Positions 53,661-62,161 of a stretch of DNA of 64,000 bases are shown piece by piece (the first letter of the stretch is position 1; each line of letters starts with the position of its first letter). Source of the DNA: Obrimoposthia wandeli. Its lineage: Eukaryota. The DNA is taken from the NCBI GenBank assembly GCA_977020255.1, contig CDROCS010002432.1, positions 1-64,000 of the forward strand, read 5' to 3'. A program made the position numbers and the translations under genes. The notes below the pieces were generated by a model, which worked only from the letters and a program-made list of their open reading frames with translations, was not told where the DNA came from and made no database searches.

Positions 53661-53661
53661 C

Positions 53662-54090
53662 GAGTTGACGAGACAATCGCTGCTTTATCGTTGTACTGCT
53701 TATTTATAAGTAGTAGACAGATAAGGGGGAGGAAAGTCCGGGCTCCAATGAACAGGGTGCCAGGTAACGCCTGGGGGGCGCGAGCCCACGACAAGTGCAG
53801 CAGAGAGAAGACCGCCGATGGTTATCTTTCGAGATTTCACAGGTAAGGCTGAAAGGGTGCGGTAAGAGCGCACCGGATTGCTGGTAACAGTAATTGCAGG
53901 GTAAACTCCACCCGGAGCAAGACCAAATAGGGTTTCATGACTAGGTTAACGCAAGTTTTCATAGTATAAGCGTGGTTCGCGTGGAAACCGGGTAGGTTGC
54001 TTGAGCCTTAGAGCGATTTAAGGCCTAGACGAATGATTGTCACTCTTCCTCGGAAGAGATACAAAACCCGGCTTATGCGTCATCTCAACT
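53662..54090 (+). ncRNA. rnpB: RNase P RNA, bacterial type A
   Basis: GAGGAAAGTCC (53729-53739), CAGGTAACGCCTG, GGTAAACTCC, ACAAAACCCGGCTTA; GAGTTGA...TCAAC terminal P1 pairing. Confidence 0.97.
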
Positions 54091-54100
54091 ATTTTTAGAT

Positions 54101-54136
54101 GCCGCTTAATTATTTAATCGATAGTTAAGCGGCTTT
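54101..54136 (+). terminator. rnpB terminator
   Basis: GCCGCTTAA...TTAAGCGGC-TTT. Confidence 0.75.
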
Positions 54137-54418
54137 CTAAAATCACTATAATATCAAGTTTTTACATTGTGAAATGGCACAGGGTTAGACACACAGTACA
54201 AACTTATTCACGTCTTATTTTACTCTCAAATATCTATTCAAACGTCACTACAAAGCACATTTACCCTCTAATTATTTCCTAATAAACTTGTTGTTCTAGA
54301 TTGTAATGTTCTAATGAAACTGTAGAGCTTTATAGCTTAAAATAAGTAAGACTTAAGGTATCAAAATGAGCAGAAAAAAATAACAGTCAGCCCACAGTAT
54401 AAACTCGAATACGCAAAA

Positions 54419-55914: not shown

Positions 55915-56026
55915 CTATATCCTCTTCACTATTCTGCATGTATTTTGTAAGTGAAATAATAGTTATTGCTCGTAATAAAAACAATTGGCATAATTATTAA
56001 AACACTCTTCCGAAAAACGAAATAAT

Positions 56027-56935
56027 ATGGACAAGCTCGGTGATATAGATCTTTTTGTTAGGGTTATCAAAAGCCAAGGTTTGGCAGCAGCAGGTAGAGA
56101 AGTAGGACTTTCACCGGCACGAATGACAGCGAGGATCAATGGATTGGAAGAAAGATATGGTGTTCGGCTGTTAAATAGGACAACCCGGCAGATTTCTCTT
56201 ACCGACGACGGTCGTAAATTTTATGTTGCATGTGAACGTATTTTAGATGAAGTTGAGCAGGCAGAAACCTCTTTGCAAATGGGTCAAACAAGCTTTAGCG
56301 GTACACTACGTATAACCGCGCCATCTGATTTAGGCCAACAACACATAGCCCCTGTTTTATCAGCATTTGTAGAGAAGAACCCGAATATCAAACCTTACCT
56401 TTATCTTTCAGATACCGTTACTGACTTAGTTGGTGACGGGTTTGATTTAGGGATTCGATTTGGCTCCCTAGAAGATAGTACCTTGATAGCACGTAAATTG
56501 GCGAGTAATCGTCGAGTATTATGCGCATCACCCGATTATCTTAAGCGCAAAGGTATACCTACAAGCCCCGATGCATTAATGCAGCATGACTGCTTAACAA
56601 TGGTGCGTATGACTGAACCACTAACGACTTGGCATTTTCAAAATACGGATGGGAAAAGATCTCTGTCCATTAAAGCTGCTAGATCGTCGAATGACGGAGC
56701 TTTGATAAGGCGCTGGGCCATTGAAGGCGCTGGTATTGCATTAAAGTCTTACTGGGATATTGCTGAGGATCTAAAAGCTAAACGCTTAATCACTATTATG
56801 GATAATTACAAACATGACTTTAATCGCACAGGAACGTCAGCTGGAGCTGATCTGCATGCTATTTATCCAAATAAAAAGTTCATTTCACAGCGTACACTGG
56901 CCTTTATTAATGCGTTGAAAGAGCATTTTCTTTAA
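56027..56935 (+). CDS. LysR-family regulator, divergent from the VOC/OYE operon
   Basis: HTH, LLNRTTRQISLT, GDGFDLGIR. Confidence 0.93.
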   Translation: MDKLGDIDLFVRVIKSQGLAAAGREVGLSPARMTARINGLEERYGVRLLNRTTRQISLTDDGRKFYVACERILDEVEQAETSLQMGQTSFSGTLRITAPSDLGQQHIAPVLSAFVEKNPNIKPYLYLSDTVTDLVGDGFDLGIRFGSLEDSTLIARKLASNRRVLCASPDYLKRKGIPTSPDALMQHDCLTMVRMTEPLTTWHFQNTDGKRSLSIKAARSSNDGALIRRWAIEGAGIALKSYWDIAEDLKAKRLITIMDNYKHDFNRTGTSAGADLHAIYPNKKFISQRTLAFINALKEHFL

Positions 56936-57069
56936 AAATATATCCTTAAATAGCTGGCAAGTGCAATAAATTATAAAAGCCGCATATTATGAATAAGTGT
57001 GTTTGACTTTTCAGTGTATTCATAAAGTGATTTAATATCATTAAACAGTATTATTAATAATTTGAGCCT

Positions 57070-57642
57070 ATGTATTCTAAAGCGATCAAACTAACTCAAG
57101 AATTTTTTATAGAACTCAATATTGAAAATGACATTATAGTCGAAGCTGCGCGACAGTTTAAAATAATTGTAATTCAACCTGATGAGGTGTTATTACATCA
57201 AGGAGAGCAACAGCAATATGGTTATCTCATCTTGTCTGGAATATTAAAAGCCTCTTATTATTCTAATACGGGCATCGAGTATTGTAAGGAATATTATTTT
57301 AAAGATGAAATGTGTTTTTTATATTCTGCTTGGCTAACGCAATCACCTGCTACGTATCAAATTAGTGCTTTAAACACTTCTGAACTAGTTAGAGTGCCTT
57401 TAAGCTTACTAAATCTAGAAAAATGGTTACCTGCTAAAGTAGCATTACTTCAACAACAGGTACTTTATAAAGAAGATAAAGAAATATTTTTACTTTTAAA
57501 AACACCTGAAGAACGGTACTTGCACTTACTTGAACATGCCCCTAAATGGGTATTTAGTCTTAATAACATTCAACTAGCTGCTTATATTGGTATCAGCCCT
57601 ATTAGTTTATCAAGAATAAAGAATAGAATTAATAATCGTTAA
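57070..57642 (+). CDS. Crp/Fnr-family cNMP-binding regulator
   Basis: LLHQGE, TPEERY, QLAAYIGISPISLSRIK. Confidence 0.88.
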   Translation: MYSKAIKLTQEFFIELNIENDIIVEAARQFKIIVIQPDEVLLHQGEQQQYGYLILSGILKASYYSNTGIEYCKEYYFKDEMCFLYSAWLTQSPATYQISALNTSELVRVPLSLLNLEKWLPAKVALLQQQVLYKEDKEIFLLLKTPEERYLHLLEHAPKWVFSLNNIQLAAYIGISPISLSRIKNRINNR

Positions 57643-57761
57643 ACAATCGATGTATTAACTAATAGTCTGCACAATGCATTAACTTAAGTTAACGCTTTCA
57701 AAATAGCTCACCCTCATAATATCCCTATAGATTCATCCATATATTCTCTAACGGAAAGAAA

Positions 57762-58280
57762 ATGTCAGTGTTTTTTTTGTCACAATTGTTAATTGGTATC
57801 GCCATAATATTTGACTTAGCTTCATTTCAATTTAAAGAACGACGTCACATAGTAGGTTGTTTATGTATTGCTGGGGTTCTTATTTCTAGTCATTTTATTT
57901 TACTTCAACAGTATACAGCCGCGGGGTTAATGATGGTGGCTGTAATTCGTTATTTCTCAAGCATATTCACGACATCTAAATTAATCATGTCAATTTTTAT
58001 TATTTGTTCATTGCTTTTGACCACCCTTACATACACAGGAGTTGTAAGTCTTTTAAGTTGTATAGGGTCTGTAATACAAACGGTAGCTGCATTTAATCAA
58101 AATGATAAAAAATTGCGACAATTAATGATTGTTGGTACCAGTTTTTGGTTGTTCCATAATTACCTTGTAGACTCTCCTATGGCTGTAATTATGGAGGCTT
58201 TATTCATTGGTAGTAACTTGGTAGGTTACTATCGGTTCTATATAAAAACCAATGGAAAAAGCATGAAAAACAATTGTTAA
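57762..58280 (+). CDS. YgjV-family inner membrane protein
   Basis: SQLL...SFQFKERR, HFILL, WLFHNYLVDSP. Confidence 0.85.
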   Translation: MSVFFLSQLLIGIAIIFDLASFQFKERRHIVGCLCIAGVLISSHFILLQQYTAAGLMMVAVIRYFSSIFTTSKLIMSIFIICSLLLTTLTYTGVVSLLSCIGSVIQTVAAFNQNDKKLRQLMIVGTSFWLFHNYLVDSPMAVIMEALFIGSNLVGYYRFYIKTNGKSMKNNC

Positions 58281-58543
58281 GTTTTTAAACAGTCAAGTAA
58301 ATCAAAAAATAAAGTCATGTTGTTTAAACTGCACTATCAACCGATGCAATAGCATTTTTCTATCTCATTTCGGGGGCGTTAACGTATTAGGTTGATGGTC
58401 TAAATTCTTCTGCTTCGAAAATAGTCTATATCAGGCGCCGCTTAAATATTTAGGATTTCTGCAAATACTTAAAGCAAACTGGATGTGGTTTACTAAAGTA
58501 CACATGCTCTACATTTACAAGAAAAACAAGGGGTGGGGGCTAA

Positions 58544-58613
58544 CTTGTGTGTCATCTCATCAATTTCATATGCCGCTTGATTATCTAATCGATAGTTAAG
58601 CGCCTTTCTAAAA
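58544..58613 (+). repeat. Degenerate copy of the rnpB 3' end and terminator
   Basis: Aligns to 54072-54142 at about 61 of 71 positions by hand (40 of 43 over the terminator part). Confidence 0.88.
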
Positions 58614-58968
58614 CCTCATCACTTCAATCTAAATCATTACAATAAAAAATGGTTTTCAGTTAACTATACGGCAAGTATTTTGCTCTCTTTATCTACTATT
58701 TTACTCTAAATATCACCGCGAAATATATGCGCCTTATAATTTTCCGGATAAACTTTTTAGCTCGAACTGTGGATCGTCACAAATAATGAAAAACGCGTCA
58801 TACGATGAGAAAATTTAATATTTAACTTACAACAGAGAAAGGTATTGTAACTCGTCAACGCTTCAGTAAGGTCAGCTCAGATACGATACCAGAAGTTAAC
58901 ATCAATGACTTTTTGAGCTATTTTACGTGTCAGAACAAGTAGGTTTACCTTTGTCCTGACAAACAACT

Positions 58969-59320
58969 CACAGCAAGGTTATTTAAAAAACTTTCAATTT
59001 CATGATTTCCCATATCTTCGGGATGCTTCTTATCATTAAATATAATGAAACTTTTAATCCAATATAAGTAACCTGAACTCTGGATAAGTAGCACTTGCTC
59101 TAACCCATTACCTGCGTTAAAACGTCGATAAATAGCTCGCTATTCATAAACGTTCTGCCTTGGAAATGGCATAAAATGAAGCATTGATGGTGTCTATTAG
59201 TAATTTTCACCTTGTTATAGTATTTACTTTGCCACCTAAGATTTTGATTAACTTGAGTATTAAGTACTCATTATCCAGAATTCAGGTTAAGTATACTTTT
59301 TCTGTTTGTAGACTGTATCT
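58969..59320 (-). pseudogene. intI: Integron-integrase N-terminal (SAM-like) relic, split by a MITE
   Basis: After removing 59071-59287 and one TSD copy: RYSLQTEKVYLYWIKSFIIFNDKKHPEDMGNHEIESFLNNLAV, characteristic of the IntI N-terminus. Confidence 0.82.
59071..59287. mobile_element. 217-bp MITE-like element
   Basis: Terminal inverted repeats ACCTGAACTCTGGATAA / TTATCCAGAATTCAGGT (16 of 17); perfect flanking direct repeat TAAGTA at 59065-59070 and 59288-59293; no ORF. Confidence 0.88.
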
Positions 59321-59398
59321 AAATGCAAGTAGAGCAGTAAACCGATAACAAGGGTTTTCACGTAGCACCGTAATTTGAGGCTGTTTTTTCTAAAATAG

Positions 59399-59467
59399 AA
59401 ATTCTACAGGCTTGTTAGCTCTGTGGAGTCTAAGTTGAAACTGTATAAATTCTAAAGGCTCGTTAGC
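59399..59467 (+). repeat. Two 21-bp direct repeats ending in GTTAGC (attI-like?)
   Basis: AAATTCTACAGGCTTGTTAGC (59399) and AAATTCTAAAGGCTCGTTAGC (59447), 19 of 21 identical. Confidence 0.65.
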
Positions 59468-59570
59468 AGTATGACAATGACCTGTCGTTAAGCTGACGTA
59501 AAGATGTCGTATACAAAAAAGTAGTTTTTTAGCAGGATATAGTTTCAATATATTTATGTGAGAAATACAA

Positions 59571-59726
59571 ATGGAAAACTCAAAGAATAACAATTTTGTG
59601 ATAAGTTTAATGTTAACGACGATAGGTACGGTATTGACTACTATAAAAGTCGATTATTATTTAGATATTGCTGTTTTAAGTGTGGCGGTTGTTATTGGTG
59701 TACTTGGTTGTACAAAAGATAAATAG
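59571..59726 (+). CDS. Putative 51-aa membrane peptide
   Basis: MENSKNNNFVISLMLTTIGTVLTTIKVDYYLDIAVLSVAVVIGVLGCTKDK*, two hydrophobic stretches, weak RBS. Confidence 0.4.
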   Translation: MENSKNNNFVISLMLTTIGTVLTTIKVDYYLDIAVLSVAVVIGVLGCTKDK

Positions 59727-59747
59727 TAAGTGAACTGCTACAAGTGA

Positions 59748-59774
59748 TAAAAGGGTCATAGCCGTTTTAAGAAG
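59748..59774 (+). repeat. Dispersed 27-bp repeat, copy 2
   Basis: TAAAAGGGTCATAGCCGTTTTAAGAAG, 26 of 27 identical to the reverse complement of 3833-3859. Confidence 0.8.
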
Positions 59775-59849
59775 GAAGTAATCTACAATAAAGGGGCCGT
59801 TTACGCAGCACATATAATCGGCTGTAGCCTCATAAAAACATAAAAATTT

Positions 59850-59873
59850 AAAAGGCAGCCTAAGCTGCCTTTT
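59850..59873. terminator. Terminator
   Basis: AAAAGGCAGC-CTAA-GCTGCCTTTT. Confidence 0.8.
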
Positions 59874-59892
59874 GTCATTTAAAAAATCGTAT

Positions 59893-60447
59893 TTACTTAA
59901 TGAATTTTTTAAATGGTGCATCTACAGGCGTATCAGCAAGGTGATTCGTGTAGTTGCTCATCACTTTTTGCGATAAACCTACAATAATTTCAAGTAGTTG
60001 TTGTTTACCATAACCCGCTGCAAAAAATGTCTCGATTTGCTCATCGCTAATAACACCGCGTTCACGTGTCATGGCTAATGTTGTTTCGCGTAGTGCTTCT
60101 AATTTAGGGTTGGCAAGTGGTGTTTTGTTTACCAGAGCATCAACAATATCTTGGTCAACGTTCATTGAAGCTGCAATTGCGCTATGAGCAGGTACACAGT
60201 AATGGCAGTTATGTTCAACGTTAATTGATTGCCATACTACGGTAAGCTCTTCTGCATTGAATGATGTTTTTTGAAATAAATCATGCAGTACTTGGTAACC
60301 CTTAAGTAATGTTGGTGCTTCAGCCATTACTGCGTGTAAGTTAGGTAACATACCAAATGCAGCTACTGAATCAGCCATTAAAGGTTTTGCTTCTTCAGGT
60401 GCGTTTTCTGCCGTGTATAAAGTAAATTCTGTCATGTTTAATTCCAA
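59893..60447 (-). CDS. Carboxymuconolactone decarboxylase / AhpD-like protein
   Basis: FGMLPNL, EHNCHYCVPAH CxxC motif, KVMSNYTNH. Confidence 0.9.
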   Translation of the reverse strand: MELNMTEFTLYTAENAPEEAKPLMADSVAAFGMLPNLHAVMAEAPTLLKGYQVLHDLFQKTSFNAEELTVVWQSINVEHNCHYCVPAHSAIAASMNVDQDIVDALVNKTPLANPKLEALRETTLAMTRERGVISDEQIETFFAAGYGKQQLLEIIVGLSQKVMSNYTNHLADTPVDAPFKKFIK

Positions 60448-60546
60448 TAAATAATTAGGTTTAAGTAACTTCGGAACACATAGTATTTGATTTTGAGCGA
60501 CTGTTCAAGTTAAAATTGAGCGACTGTTCAATTTATTGAGAATGAT

Positions 60547-61134
60547 ATGGCTAATAAAGTTAAATTCGAACGCGAGAATGTTATTCGCGTTGCTAGCCAG
60601 CTATTTTGGCAAAAAGGTTTTCATGCCACATCAACACGTGATTTACAAGATGTTGTTAATATGCGCCCAGGTAGTATTTATGCCGCATTTGGCTCTAAGG
60701 AAGGGCTATACAGTGAGTCATTAAAAGATTACACCGTACAAATGAAAGATCAGATAGAGGGTTTTTTATCGAGCGCTGATACAGTTCTTAGTGGGTTACG
60801 TGCGTTTGTAGAGAATGTCATCATTAATACAAAAGATTGTAGTCCAAGTGCTATTTGTATGTTGGTTAAAGCAAACAGTGAATTTGCAGAAAAAGACTCG
60901 AATTTATATCAGTTGACTATAGATTTATCTGCCCAGTTTGAACGCTATTTAACACAATTGTTTGACCAAGCCATTAACCATGGCGAGCTAAATAGTAGGC
61001 TTACAGCCCTTGAGTATGCCCGTTTTTTTCAGGTGCAATTTACCGGGTTACGCGGTTACTTTAATCGCCCAAATGTGGCGCCGTTAGCTGAGCCAATGAT
61101 CAATCAAATGTTTATGTTAATGAAGAACCTATAA
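60547..61134 (+). CDS. TetR/AcrR-family regulator
   Basis: LFWQKGFHATS, PGSIYAAFGSKEGL; divergent from the AhpD-like gene. Confidence 0.92.
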   Translation: MANKVKFERENVIRVASQLFWQKGFHATSTRDLQDVVNMRPGSIYAAFGSKEGLYSESLKDYTVQMKDQIEGFLSSADTVLSGLRAFVENVIINTKDCSPSAICMLVKANSEFAEKDSNLYQLTIDLSAQFERYLTQLFDQAINHGELNSRLTALEYARFFQVQFTGLRGYFNRPNVAPLAEPMINQMFMLMKNL

Positions 61135-61459
61135 CAGCATTAATAATACGCATATGAAATATTTTTCATTCGCTAAAAACGCCAGTTATTGCAGGTAATG
61201 ATTAAGCCCAATCCATACGCTACTCATTTTGACCAATGATTGCCTTATGAATAGTTAAATAGCTGTTATTGCCGGCTATAAAGCAACTTATAATTATTCC
61301 CAAGCCTGAGGGGATATTAGGAGAAGCAAAAATATTTTTAAGCGCTTTGTCACTGTGTTGAATCGCTTTTTATTTAAAAATATCGCACAGAAAAACAATT
61401 AGTGTATACACTGATTGAATTATTTACATAAGCACATTATTTACATAAGCCATTACTTG

Positions 61460-62161
61460 ATGACACAACATATCCAGACCCTGAAGCACTTATTAGCCAC
61501 AAAGGATGATAAAGTACTAAAACAGCATTACTTAGCTTCCAGTGAAGCTGAAAATATTGTTCAATTAGCTCACCTTTTTCAGCTGGGAATGAGTGAACTT
61601 TCTACTTATGATTCTTATCAGCAGCTTGCCACTGACTTGATAAAAAGCAAAAGTTTTCCTATTGCTCTAATAGCACAAATGAAAACAAGTGAAGCCTTAA
61701 GCTTTTTCACTTTAGCATTGCAATTAGTGGATAATTTTAAGTTAACAAACCTCCTTCAGCGTAATGCGCTGCATTATTCTTTTCAAGGAAGTCGAAAAAT
61801 AGCCAGTGCTGCACCGTTCAATTACTTGCGCTCTATGATGCTATTTGAAAGTAATGATACCTTGCGTGACGCGCTATGCCAGCGTGATCAGTTTCATTTG
61901 ACACCCATTGAAGCATATTTACAGGGTAATGAAGATTTTACCGACTTAGCCCCTCATGAATTTAATGCCTTATTGGCCTTGATAGAAATTGAAAGTAAGC
62001 AACAAGCTGTTGAAAAAAATAACTATATATCGACTATTAAAGTCGTAGGGGAATTATGTCGAGAGCAAGCATTATCTATATCGACTGACTTACAGCGGTT
62101 GGTGTTAATAGCGATATATTTTTCGAAACCGATTAAAGAGGTTGTTCATGATTTACGCTAG
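61460..62161 (+). CDS. Hypothetical protein
   Basis: Long ORF (track 61415-62161), probable ATG at 61460; no recognised motif. Confidence 0.65.
   Translation: MTQHIQTLKHLLATKDDKVLKQHYLASSEAENIVQLAHLFQLGMSELSTYDSYQQLATDLIKSKSFPIALIAQMKTSEALSFFTLALQLVDNFKLTNLLQRNALHYSFQGSRKIASAAPFNYLRSMMLFESNDTLRDALCQRDQFHLTPIEAYLQGNEDFTDLAPHEFNALLALIEIESKQQAVEKNNYISTIKVVGELCREQALSISTDLQRLVLIAIYFSKPIKEVVHDLR

What the first reader, a model, noticed from the sequence alone, without database searches (positions are those of the whole stretch)
58969..59320. Hidden integron-integrase relic whose reading frame is exactly restored by excising a MITE
Seen: minus strand ...GAA AAA GTA TACTTA [217-bp element] TACTTA TAT TGG ATT AAA... 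Removing the element and one TACTTA gives the in-frame peptide RYSLQTEKVYLYWIKSFIIFNDKKHPEDMGNHEIESFLNNLAV. Established: this YS-x-x-TE-x-x-Y-x-x-WI...HP..MG..E...FL..LAV pattern is the N-terminal SAM-like domain of integron integrases. The start and the catalytic domain are gone. Inference: a dead chromosomal integron just downstream of the displaced rnpB 3' end.
Basis: partly seen in the sequence, partly recalled or inferred. Interest (0 to 1): 0.75.

Follow-up and report, generated by a model that had tools for sequence, protein, structure and literature searches.

The report
MITE-split integron integrase gene relic
A short dead remnant of an integron integrase gene, cut in two by a small jumping element and next to stubs of cassette recombination sites, sits beside the RNase P RNA gene of a Colwellia-like marine bacterium; it is real, but it is an ordinary kind of gene decay.

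Summary
On the minus strand, 58966-59065 and 59289-59320 (probably up to about 59355) are two pieces of one reading frame. They are separated by a 219-bp MITE (59070-59288) with 4-bp target duplications (AAGT).

The MITE family has at least 30 copies in this assembly, and 20 of 24 full copies have perfect 4-bp duplications. The excision rule therefore comes from the family, not from this locus.

Removing the element and one duplication gives a peptide that aligns without gaps across the junction to all 13 tested integron integrases that pass the TIGR02249 cut-off. The best match is 82% over 44 aa, to an intact 319-aa IntI on a metagenome contig. The closest non-integron recombinases tested give only noise.

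About 50-56 of roughly 320 codons survive. The start, promoter with LexA box, attI, catalytic domain and IntI-specific insert are all gone.

New here: directly upstream, in the expected orientation, lie two stubs of the 140-nt cassette-boundary repeat that forms cassette arrays elsewhere in this bacterium. The "dead integron" reading is therefore supported, but whether an integron ever worked at this site is open: none of 80 relatives has intI near rnpB.

intI pseudogenes and decayed integrons are well known, so this is a tidy new example and not a new system.

The parts
58544..58613 (+). Displaced second copy of the rnpB 3' tail and terminator (context: right edge of the 4.4-kb islet).
   Evidence: 86% identity over 71 bp to 54072-54142. 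This copy and its right flank up to 58649 match the rnpB tail of Cognaticolwellia aestuarii.
58768..58893 (.). 126-nt dispersed repeat between the rnpB tail and the broken 3' end of the relic.
   Evidence: 83% and 77% identical copies on contigs C3797 and C6803. Further copies in relatives G001 and G004. In C3797 it lies just inside a terminal repeat of the MITE type.
58966..59065 (-). intI relic, 3' piece (YWIKSF... to ...LAVS). Homology to IntI stops abruptly at 58966-58970.
   Evidence: PF13495 at 38.5 bits; TIGR02249 at 31.3 bits, model positions 23-56; PDB 2A3V residues 27-60; DNA 84% identical to intact intI on L144.
59066..59069 (.). Left target-site duplication AAGT.
   Evidence: Identical to 59289-59292. 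20 of 24 family members have a perfect 4-bp duplication.
59070..59288 (.). MITE, 219 bp, with terminal inverted repeats and no long ORF; the most diverged copy of its family.
   Evidence: 33 matches in the assembly. Terminal-repeat pattern found 40 times forward and 38 reverse, against 2 and 4 for the control. 88.7% identical to the 231-bp consensus with a 12-bp deletion; other copies are 90-99.6%.
59289..59355 (-). intI relic, 5' piece, including the right duplication (59289-59292). RYSLQTEKVYL is firm (up to 59320); 6-12 further upstream codons are probably intI-derived.
   Evidence: The restored frame aligns from T (6 codons before RYSL) to LAVS with L144 IntI residues 12-61, 76% over 50 aa. 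Scanned alone in the right frame it gives no family hit.
59356..59420 (+). Stub of the 140-nt cassette-boundary (attC-type) repeat. It has a 26-nt internal deletion and ends in GTTAGC (59414-59419). It replaces the intI start, promoter and attI.
   Evidence: 94-98% identical to repeat copies arrayed on C5179, C3765 and other contigs.
59444..59467 (+). Second stub: the last 24 nt of the same repeat, also ending in GTTAGC.
   Evidence: Direct repeat D1; matches unit positions 119-140.
59571..59726 (+). 51-aa hydrophobic ORF in cassette orientation; a possible orphan cassette gene.
   Evidence: ORF list. Only a weak DUF5493 hit below cut-off. The region 59421-59892 is unique in the assembly and absent from C. 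aestuarii.

Best explanation
This is a non-functional remnant of an integron. An integron integrase gene (intI, minus strand) belonging to a lineage found in Cognaticolwellia/Colwellia has been reduced to about codons 6-12 through 61 of roughly 320.

Three separate lesions are visible:
1. A 231-bp-family MITE inserted at a TACTTA site inside codons 27/28, duplicating 4 bp.
2. Everything 3' of the LAV(S) motif is deleted: the rest of the core-binding domain, the catalytic domain and the IntI-specific insert.
3. The first few codons, the promoter with its LexA box, and attI are replaced by a truncated copy of the cassette-boundary (attC-type) repeat. That is the pattern expected if a deletion fused an inner attC of the cassette array to the 5' end of intI.

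A second 24-nt attC stub and one small ORF are all that remains of the array. The remnant lies in a variable spot between the rnpB terminator and a conserved AhpD-like/TetR gene pair. It most likely does nothing now.

Shown: the identity of the pieces, the MITE boundaries and the attC stubs. Inferred: the order of the events, and that the integron once worked at this site.
For: - IntI identity: for the 3' piece alone.
- The restored core matches 13 of 13 bona fide IntI at 44-82 bits without gaps. The best match is 82% over 44 aa (76% over 50 aa) to the intact 319-aa IntI on L144, which scores 383 bits on TIGR02249 against a cut-off of 265.
- DNA aligns without gaps across the junction; relatives carry TATTTA where the window has TACTTA.
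- MITE family rule.
- No other IntI-coding sequence in 56000-62000.
- attC-type stubs. The same repeat separates single, mostly same-strand ORFs (GNAT, GrpB, DUFs and an inverted YoeB/YefM pair) on C5179, and lies 2.4 kb upstream of another truncated intI on C3765.
- Intact Colwellia intI genes carry a CTGT-N8-ACAG box upstream that is missing here.
- All five closest relatives have at least one full IntI, so integrons are native to the genus.
- intI pseudogenes make up about one third of intI genes (PMC2426708).
Against: - None of the 80 Colwelliaceae rsmI-rnpB loci has intI, the attC-type repeat or this relic within 10 kb. C. aestuarii has rnpB followed almost directly by the AhpD-like gene. 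An integron at this site is therefore not documented in any relative.
- The canonical attC hairpin (R''/L'' pairing with L'/R') could not be shown for the 140-nt repeat. Only a short stem next to the GTTRRRY-like end is evident, and the copies are too alike for covariation.
- The upstream 6-12 codons are only weakly IntI-like.
- The assembly is a mixture of many organisms (1.35 Gb), so "same bacterium" for other contigs rests on shared repeats.
Confidence: 0.88

Rival explanations
1. The fragment never belonged to an integron that worked at this site. A piece of the bacterium's integron (an attC-intI junction) was copied or moved here by recombination between dispersed repeats or with incoming DNA, into a hot spot next to rnpB.
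For: No relative has an integron here. The 1.2-kb segment 58650-59870 is absent from C. aestuarii. It is bordered or interrupted by dispersed repeats: the 126-nt repeat, the MITE and the attC stubs. The same bacterium apparently has cassette arrays and a second truncated intI elsewhere. The neighbouring 4.4-kb islet shows that the site takes up foreign DNA.
Against: The relic is only 62% identical to the other intI fragment, on C3765, so it is not a recent internal copy. The orientation of intI and the attC stubs is exactly that of a native integron. Decay in place needs no extra step.
Confidence: 0.3
2. The relic comes from a non-integron tyrosine recombinase with a SAM_4-type N-terminal domain, for example the integrase of the island integrated at the rnpB 3' end.
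For: PF13495 is not restricted to IntI. The relic lies 353 bp from the displaced rnpB tail of an islet that has no integrase gene of its own.
Against: Only integron-integrase models hit it in NCBIfam. The 13 IntI above cut-off match at 44-82 bits, while the nearest non-IntI recombinases give at most 14 bits. Its best relatives are full IntI by TIGR02249. The relic lies outside the islet's direct repeats and next to attC stubs.
Confidence: 0.03
3. Artefact: a chance ORF similarity, or a chimeric join of two unrelated contigs at a repeated MITE.
For: The MITE has more than 30 near-identical copies in a short-contig, multi-organism assembly. That situation can cause mis-joins.
Against: The two flanks complete the same gene in the same frame at adjacent codons and carry the matching 4-bp duplication. 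This copy is the most diverged of the family (88.7%), so it is not easily confused with the others. E-values reach 1e-24 in pairwise search.
Confidence: 0.02
4. The remnant is kept because it still does something. For example, it could hold an outward promoter like Pc, which lies inside the 5' part of intI1 in class 1 integrons, driving the small ORF at 59571-59726. Or it could give a 49-aa peptide started inside the MITE (58945-59094).
For: The frame is open over 73 codons once restored. A GTG-started 49-aa ORF exists. That Pc overlaps the 5' end of intI1 in class 1 integrons is my own knowledge, not tested here.
Against: Promoter-like sites are not enriched: 3 found against 6.3 expected. The MITE splits the region. 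No relative conserves the segment. The MITE copy and the attC stubs show decay.
Confidence: 0.03

Closest known systems
intI pseudogenes ("pseudo-integrons"; Nemergut et al. 2008, PMC2426708)
   Same: A chromosomal integron integrase gene inactivated by insertion and deletion, in a genus where intact intI genes are common. That paper reports that about one third of intI genes are pseudogenes.
   Different: Here only about 17% of the gene survives, and only its N-terminal end. The pseudogenes listed in that survey were selected on the IntI additional domain (patch), which is lost here.
Decayed integrons and CALIN (clusters of attC sites lacking an integrase; Cury et al. 2016, PMC4889954)
   Same: Remnants of a cassette array without a working integrase. 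IS elements and rearrangements are implicated in their origin.
   Different: CALIN needs at least two attC sites. Here there are only two truncated stubs, so the locus would be called neither CALIN nor In0. IntegronFinder's pseudo-intI search uses the C-terminal profile and PF00589, so a relic like this one would be missed.
VchIntIA (IntI4) of Vibrio cholerae, PDB 2A3V
   Same: The only solved structure that matches by sequence. Relic residues align to residues 27-60 of its N-terminal domain.
   Different: VchIntIA is a complete 320-aa enzyme. The relic lacks all catalytic residues.
Prokaryotic MITEs that interrupt genes (reviewed in PMC10969869)
   Same: A short non-coding element with terminal inverted repeats and target duplications, present in tens of copies per genome.
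   Different: No autonomous partner IS was found. The one 2.1-kb element bounded by the same ends holds a single-copy 427-aa ORF with no transposase signature. I did not check whether this MITE family has a published name.

Membership tests
Integron integrase (IntI, TIGR02249) | N-terminal SAM-like domain with IntI-type sequence | tested here: met
   PF13495 at 38.5 bits. Only IntI models hit in NCBIfam. 82% identity to the intact IntI on L144.
Integron integrase (IntI, TIGR02249) | Whole-protein score above the curated cut-off (265 bits) | tested here: not met
   31-32 bits, model positions 21-56 only. It is a fragment of a member, not a member.
Integron integrase (IntI, TIGR02249) | Catalytic domain (R-H-R-Y) and the IntI-specific additional domain | tested here: not met
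   tblastn with three full IntI proteins finds nothing beyond residues 31-75 in 56000-62000, with or without the MITE.
Integron (platform) | attI and a promoter region upstream of intI (with a LexA box in these relatives) | tested here: not met
   Intact relatives have CTGT-N8-ACAG upstream. In the window, attC-derived sequence starts 12 codons upstream of RYSL.
Integron (platform) | Cassettes with attC sites on the strand opposite to intI, on its upstream side | tested here: inconclusive
   There are two truncated stubs of the array repeat in the right place and orientation, but no complete site and no complete cassette.
attC site (for the 140-nt array repeat) | Sits at cassette boundaries in same-orientation arrays; similarity ends at a GTTRRRY-like core | tested here: met
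   Arrays on C5179 and C3765 have 0.5-1.6 kb spacing and single ORFs between copies. The copies diverge right after GTTA.
attC site (for the 140-nt array repeat) | Imperfect hairpin pairing R''-L'' with L'-R', with RYYYAAC at the 5' end | tested here: inconclusive
   Only a short stem (GAGGCTGT/ACAGGCTC) next to the 3' core is seen, with no clear RYYYAAC partner and no covariation. IntegronFinder's attC model is not available here.
MITE | Terminal inverted repeats, target-site duplication, small size, no transposase, many copies | tested here: met
   33 matches in this assembly (24 full-length copies compared), and 40 or more matches in each of two related species.
MITE | Autonomous IS with the same ends | tested here: inconclusive
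   None was found in the assembly.

The most novel reading that the evidence does not exclude
N-terminal-only intI relics such as this one are invisible to standard pipelines, which look for the C-terminal IntI signature. They may mark many almost fully erased integrons. That would explain part of the orphan cassette arrays that have no recognisable integrase pseudogene. It would also suggest that the variable spot next to rnpB in Cognaticolwellia once hosted an integron. Separately, the 231-bp MITE with a TANNTA target and no identifiable autonomous partner may be an undescribed family.
Probability: 0.3. Interest if true: 0.4.

Novelty: new member of a known kind. Interest (0 to 1): 0.25.

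Why it matters
The finding shows one late stage of integron loss: the integrase reduced to about 50 codons, attI gone, and the array reduced to two site stubs. It also shows that such a stage can still be recognised once a MITE is computationally removed.

The practical points are modest. Searches for dead integrons that rely on the C-terminal IntI profile would miss this class. The MITE family and the rnpB-adjacent variable spot are useful markers for comparing Cognaticolwellia genomes. No new mechanism is involved.

Tried and rejected
- Wrong frame. The second protein (window:59287-59388, minus) was one base out of frame, so those blanks mean nothing. Rescanned in the right frame (59291-59389), the 5' piece alone still hits no family. 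That is expected, because only 11 residues of it are conserved.
I used RsmI instead to fetch the syntenic loci.
- No exact record of the neighbouring RsmI protein was found in the look-up of encoding contigs.
- An orthologous relic in C. polaris was rejected. C. polaris has a MITE right after rnpB, but it is an independent insertion (duplication ACTT) with no IntI-like flank.
- A parent IS was sought and not found. The 2144-bp element on C3797 shares the ends, but its 427-aa ORF has no Pfam or NCBIfam transposase hit and is single-copy.
- The canonical attC fold could not be shown.
- The C253 integron region holds only one copy of the repeat, so it did not help.
- A promoter scan gave no signal.
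The junctions and a possible empty-site allele therefore could not be checked in reads, and I did not try another route.
- The two large protein searches were not used, because the family scans left nothing open.

Full report
**Setting.** The window is a bacterial contig inside a 1.35-Gb assembly that holds many organisms. Its RsmI protein is 94-97% identical to those of Cognaticolwellia/Colwellia species, and DNA identity is about 80-89%. The host is therefore a Cognaticolwellia-like gammaproteobacterium. rnpB lies at 53661-54091.

**Observation.** Between the two halves of the frame lies an element with 17-19-nt terminal inverted repeats.
- The element has 33 matches in the assembly. Its terminal-repeat pattern occurs 40 times forward and 38 times reverse, against 2 and 4 for a control pattern.
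- Twenty-four full copies give a 231-bp consensus. Twenty of them have a perfect 4-bp target duplication, and the preferred target is TANNTA.
- By this family-wide rule the element here is 59070-59288, and the duplications are AAGT at 59066-59069 and 59289-59292.
- It is the most diverged copy of the family: 88.7% identical to the consensus, with a 12-bp deletion, so it is probably an old insertion.
- The family is also abundant in C. polaris and C. aestuarii, with 40 or more hits each.
- Removing the element and one duplication restores a 73-codon open frame that contains the IntI-like 44-residue core.

**What the frame is.**
- The 3' piece alone passes Pfam's cut-off for Phage_int_SAM_4.
- Among all NCBIfam models it hits only the two integron-integrase models.
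- Among all solved structures it hits only VchIntIA, residues 27-60.
- All five closest sequenced relatives carry at least one IntI above the TIGR02249 cut-off. The restored core aligns to these and to the four full IntI of the assembly without any gap, at 44-71 bits.
- A degenerate pattern for the motif KKHPEDMGNHEIE found one metagenome contig, L144. It encodes an intact 319-aa IntI (383 bits, cut-off 265).
- The relic is 82% identical to the L144 IntI over 44 aa and 76% over 50 aa. At the DNA level identity is 83% over 115 nt, ungapped across the excision junction.
- The best non-IntI recombinases of the assembly give only noise.
- Uninterrupted relatives have TATTTA where the window has TACTTA, which fits the MITE target.
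- A pseudogene of the same IntI lineage exists in Colwellia sp. MB3u-45 (L129), in another genomic context.

**How much is left.**
- Full IntI queries find nothing beyond residues about 31-75 anywhere in 56000-62000.
- DNA similarity to intI genes of relatives ends abruptly at 58966-58970.
- Upstream, firm homology starts 6 codons before RYSL.
- At 59356 the sequence switches to something else (see the next section), so the first few codons and the start codon are missing.
- Intact Colwellia intI genes have a LexA-type box (CTGT-N8-ACAG) just upstream. The window has none.

**The upstream neighbour.**
- Region 59356-59420 (plus strand) is 94-98% identical to the 3' part of a 140-nt repeat, with a 26-nt internal deletion, and ends in GTTAGC.
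- Region 59444-59467 repeats the last 24 nt of the same unit.
- Elsewhere in the assembly this repeat forms same-orientation arrays with 0.5-1.6 kb spacing. Between copies lie single ORFs: GNAT acetyltransferases, GrpB, DUF6058, DUF1330, DUF1706, and an inverted YoeB/YefM toxin-antitoxin pair. Similarity ends right after GTTA.
- On C3765 two full copies and two fragments lie 2.4 kb upstream of another truncated intI of 95 aa, which matches TIGR02249 positions 1-83.
- This is the architecture of a chromosomal integron cassette array. In the window, the orientation relative to intI is the canonical one.
- I could not show the canonical attC hairpin. Only a short stem next to the 3' core is evident, and the copies are too similar for covariation. 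I therefore call it an attC-type cassette-boundary repeat.
That agrees with this picture, but I did not check that it concerns the same contigs.

**Context.**
- The rnpB tail and terminator are duplicated: 54072-54142 against 58544-58613, 86% identical. They bracket a 4.4-kb islet with Old Yellow Enzyme-type, LysR, cNMP-binding and YgjV genes. That islet is the subject of another finding, s1-214852.
- The relic lies outside this islet, 353 bp beyond its right repeat.
- In C. aestuarii the rnpB terminator is followed after about 140 bp by the AhpD-like/TetR pair, which corresponds to window 59871-61124. The whole stretch 58650-59870 is therefore extra in this bacterium.
- Its unique parts are found in none of the five closest genomes. 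None of the 80 Colwelliaceae rsmI-rnpB loci has intI or the array repeat within 10 kb.
- A 126-nt dispersed repeat (58768-58893) lies between the rnpB tail and the broken 3' end of intI.

**Most likely history** (inferred). An integron, or part of one, lay between rnpB and the AhpD-like gene. A MITE inserted in codons 27/28 of intI. One deletion removed the 3' five sixths of the gene. Another fused an inner attC of the array to the 5' end of intI, removing attI and the promoter. Almost all cassettes were lost.
- The order of these events cannot be read from the sequence.
- The main open alternative, at about 0.3, is that the fragment was imported or copied into this hot spot and never worked here.
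- Functional readings have no support. Promoter-like sites are not enriched, and the segment is not conserved in relatives.

**Comparison with what is known.** About one third of intI genes are pseudogenes (PMC2426708). Decayed integrons and orphan arrays are common, and IS elements are implicated in their origin (PMC4889954). This locus is a further example, at an unusually late stage of erasure. Because IntegronFinder's pseudogene search uses the C-terminal IntI profile, such N-terminal relics would escape it.

**Limits.**
- Two early scans of the 5' piece were out of frame and were repeated in frame.
- Contigs other than the window are assigned to the same bacterium only through shared repeats.

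**Verdict.** This is a new member of a known kind, of low to moderate interest.

Noticed in passing
window 54072-54142 and 58544-58613: The rnpB tail and terminator are duplicated (86% over 71 bp), bracketing a 4.4-kb islet with no integrase gene. The right copy resembles the C. aestuarii tail. The left junction up to 54289 resembles Colwellia sp. MB3u-45 and MB3u-8.
   Followed up: partly
L035:12312-12544 (Colwellia polaris): An independent copy of the same MITE family (duplication ACTT) sits directly downstream of rnpB in C. polaris. The rnpB flank therefore attracts insertions in several species.
   Followed up: partly
window 58768-58893; G000:C3797:17912-18037; G000:C6803:13907-14037: A 126-nt dispersed repeat, also present in relatives G001 and G004. 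Its nature is unknown. In C3797 it starts right after a terminal repeat of the MITE type.
   Followed up: partly
L140:893-3036 (G000:C3797:17892-20035): A 2144-bp unit bounded by MITE-type terminal repeats, with near-matching 4-bp flanks (AGAT/AAAT). It holds a single-copy 427-aa ORF with no Pfam or NCBIfam family. It is not an obvious transposase, so this may be cargo captured between two MITE ends.
   Followed up: partly
L133:1013-1300 (G000:C3765:51012-51299): A second truncated intI (95 aa with an intact start; TIGR02249 positions 1-83) lies on a contig that also carries the MITE. At least two array repeats and GNAT cassettes lie 2.4 kb upstream of it.
   Followed up: partly
L132:1-5500 (G000:C5179): A cassette array at a contig end: six or more copies of the 140-nt repeat separate DUF6058, GrpB, GNAT, inverted YoeB/YefM, DUF1330 and DUF1706 genes.
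   Followed up: partly
L130, L127, L121, L144 (upstream of intI): Intact Colwellia-type intI genes carry a CTGT-N8-ACAG (LexA-type) box 20-60 nt upstream of the start codon. This is consistent with SOS control of integrases.
   Followed up: no
L129:1486-1900 (Colwellia sp. MB3u-45, G005:C50): An intI pseudogene of the same lineage as the relic (70% aa identity). It has a TGA at the conserved Trp codon and is truncated after about 130 model positions. It lies in a different genomic context.
   Followed up: partly
window 59850-59873: A strong hairpin followed by a T-run on the minus strand, right after the AhpD-like gene. It marks the right edge of the extra segment.
   Followed up: no
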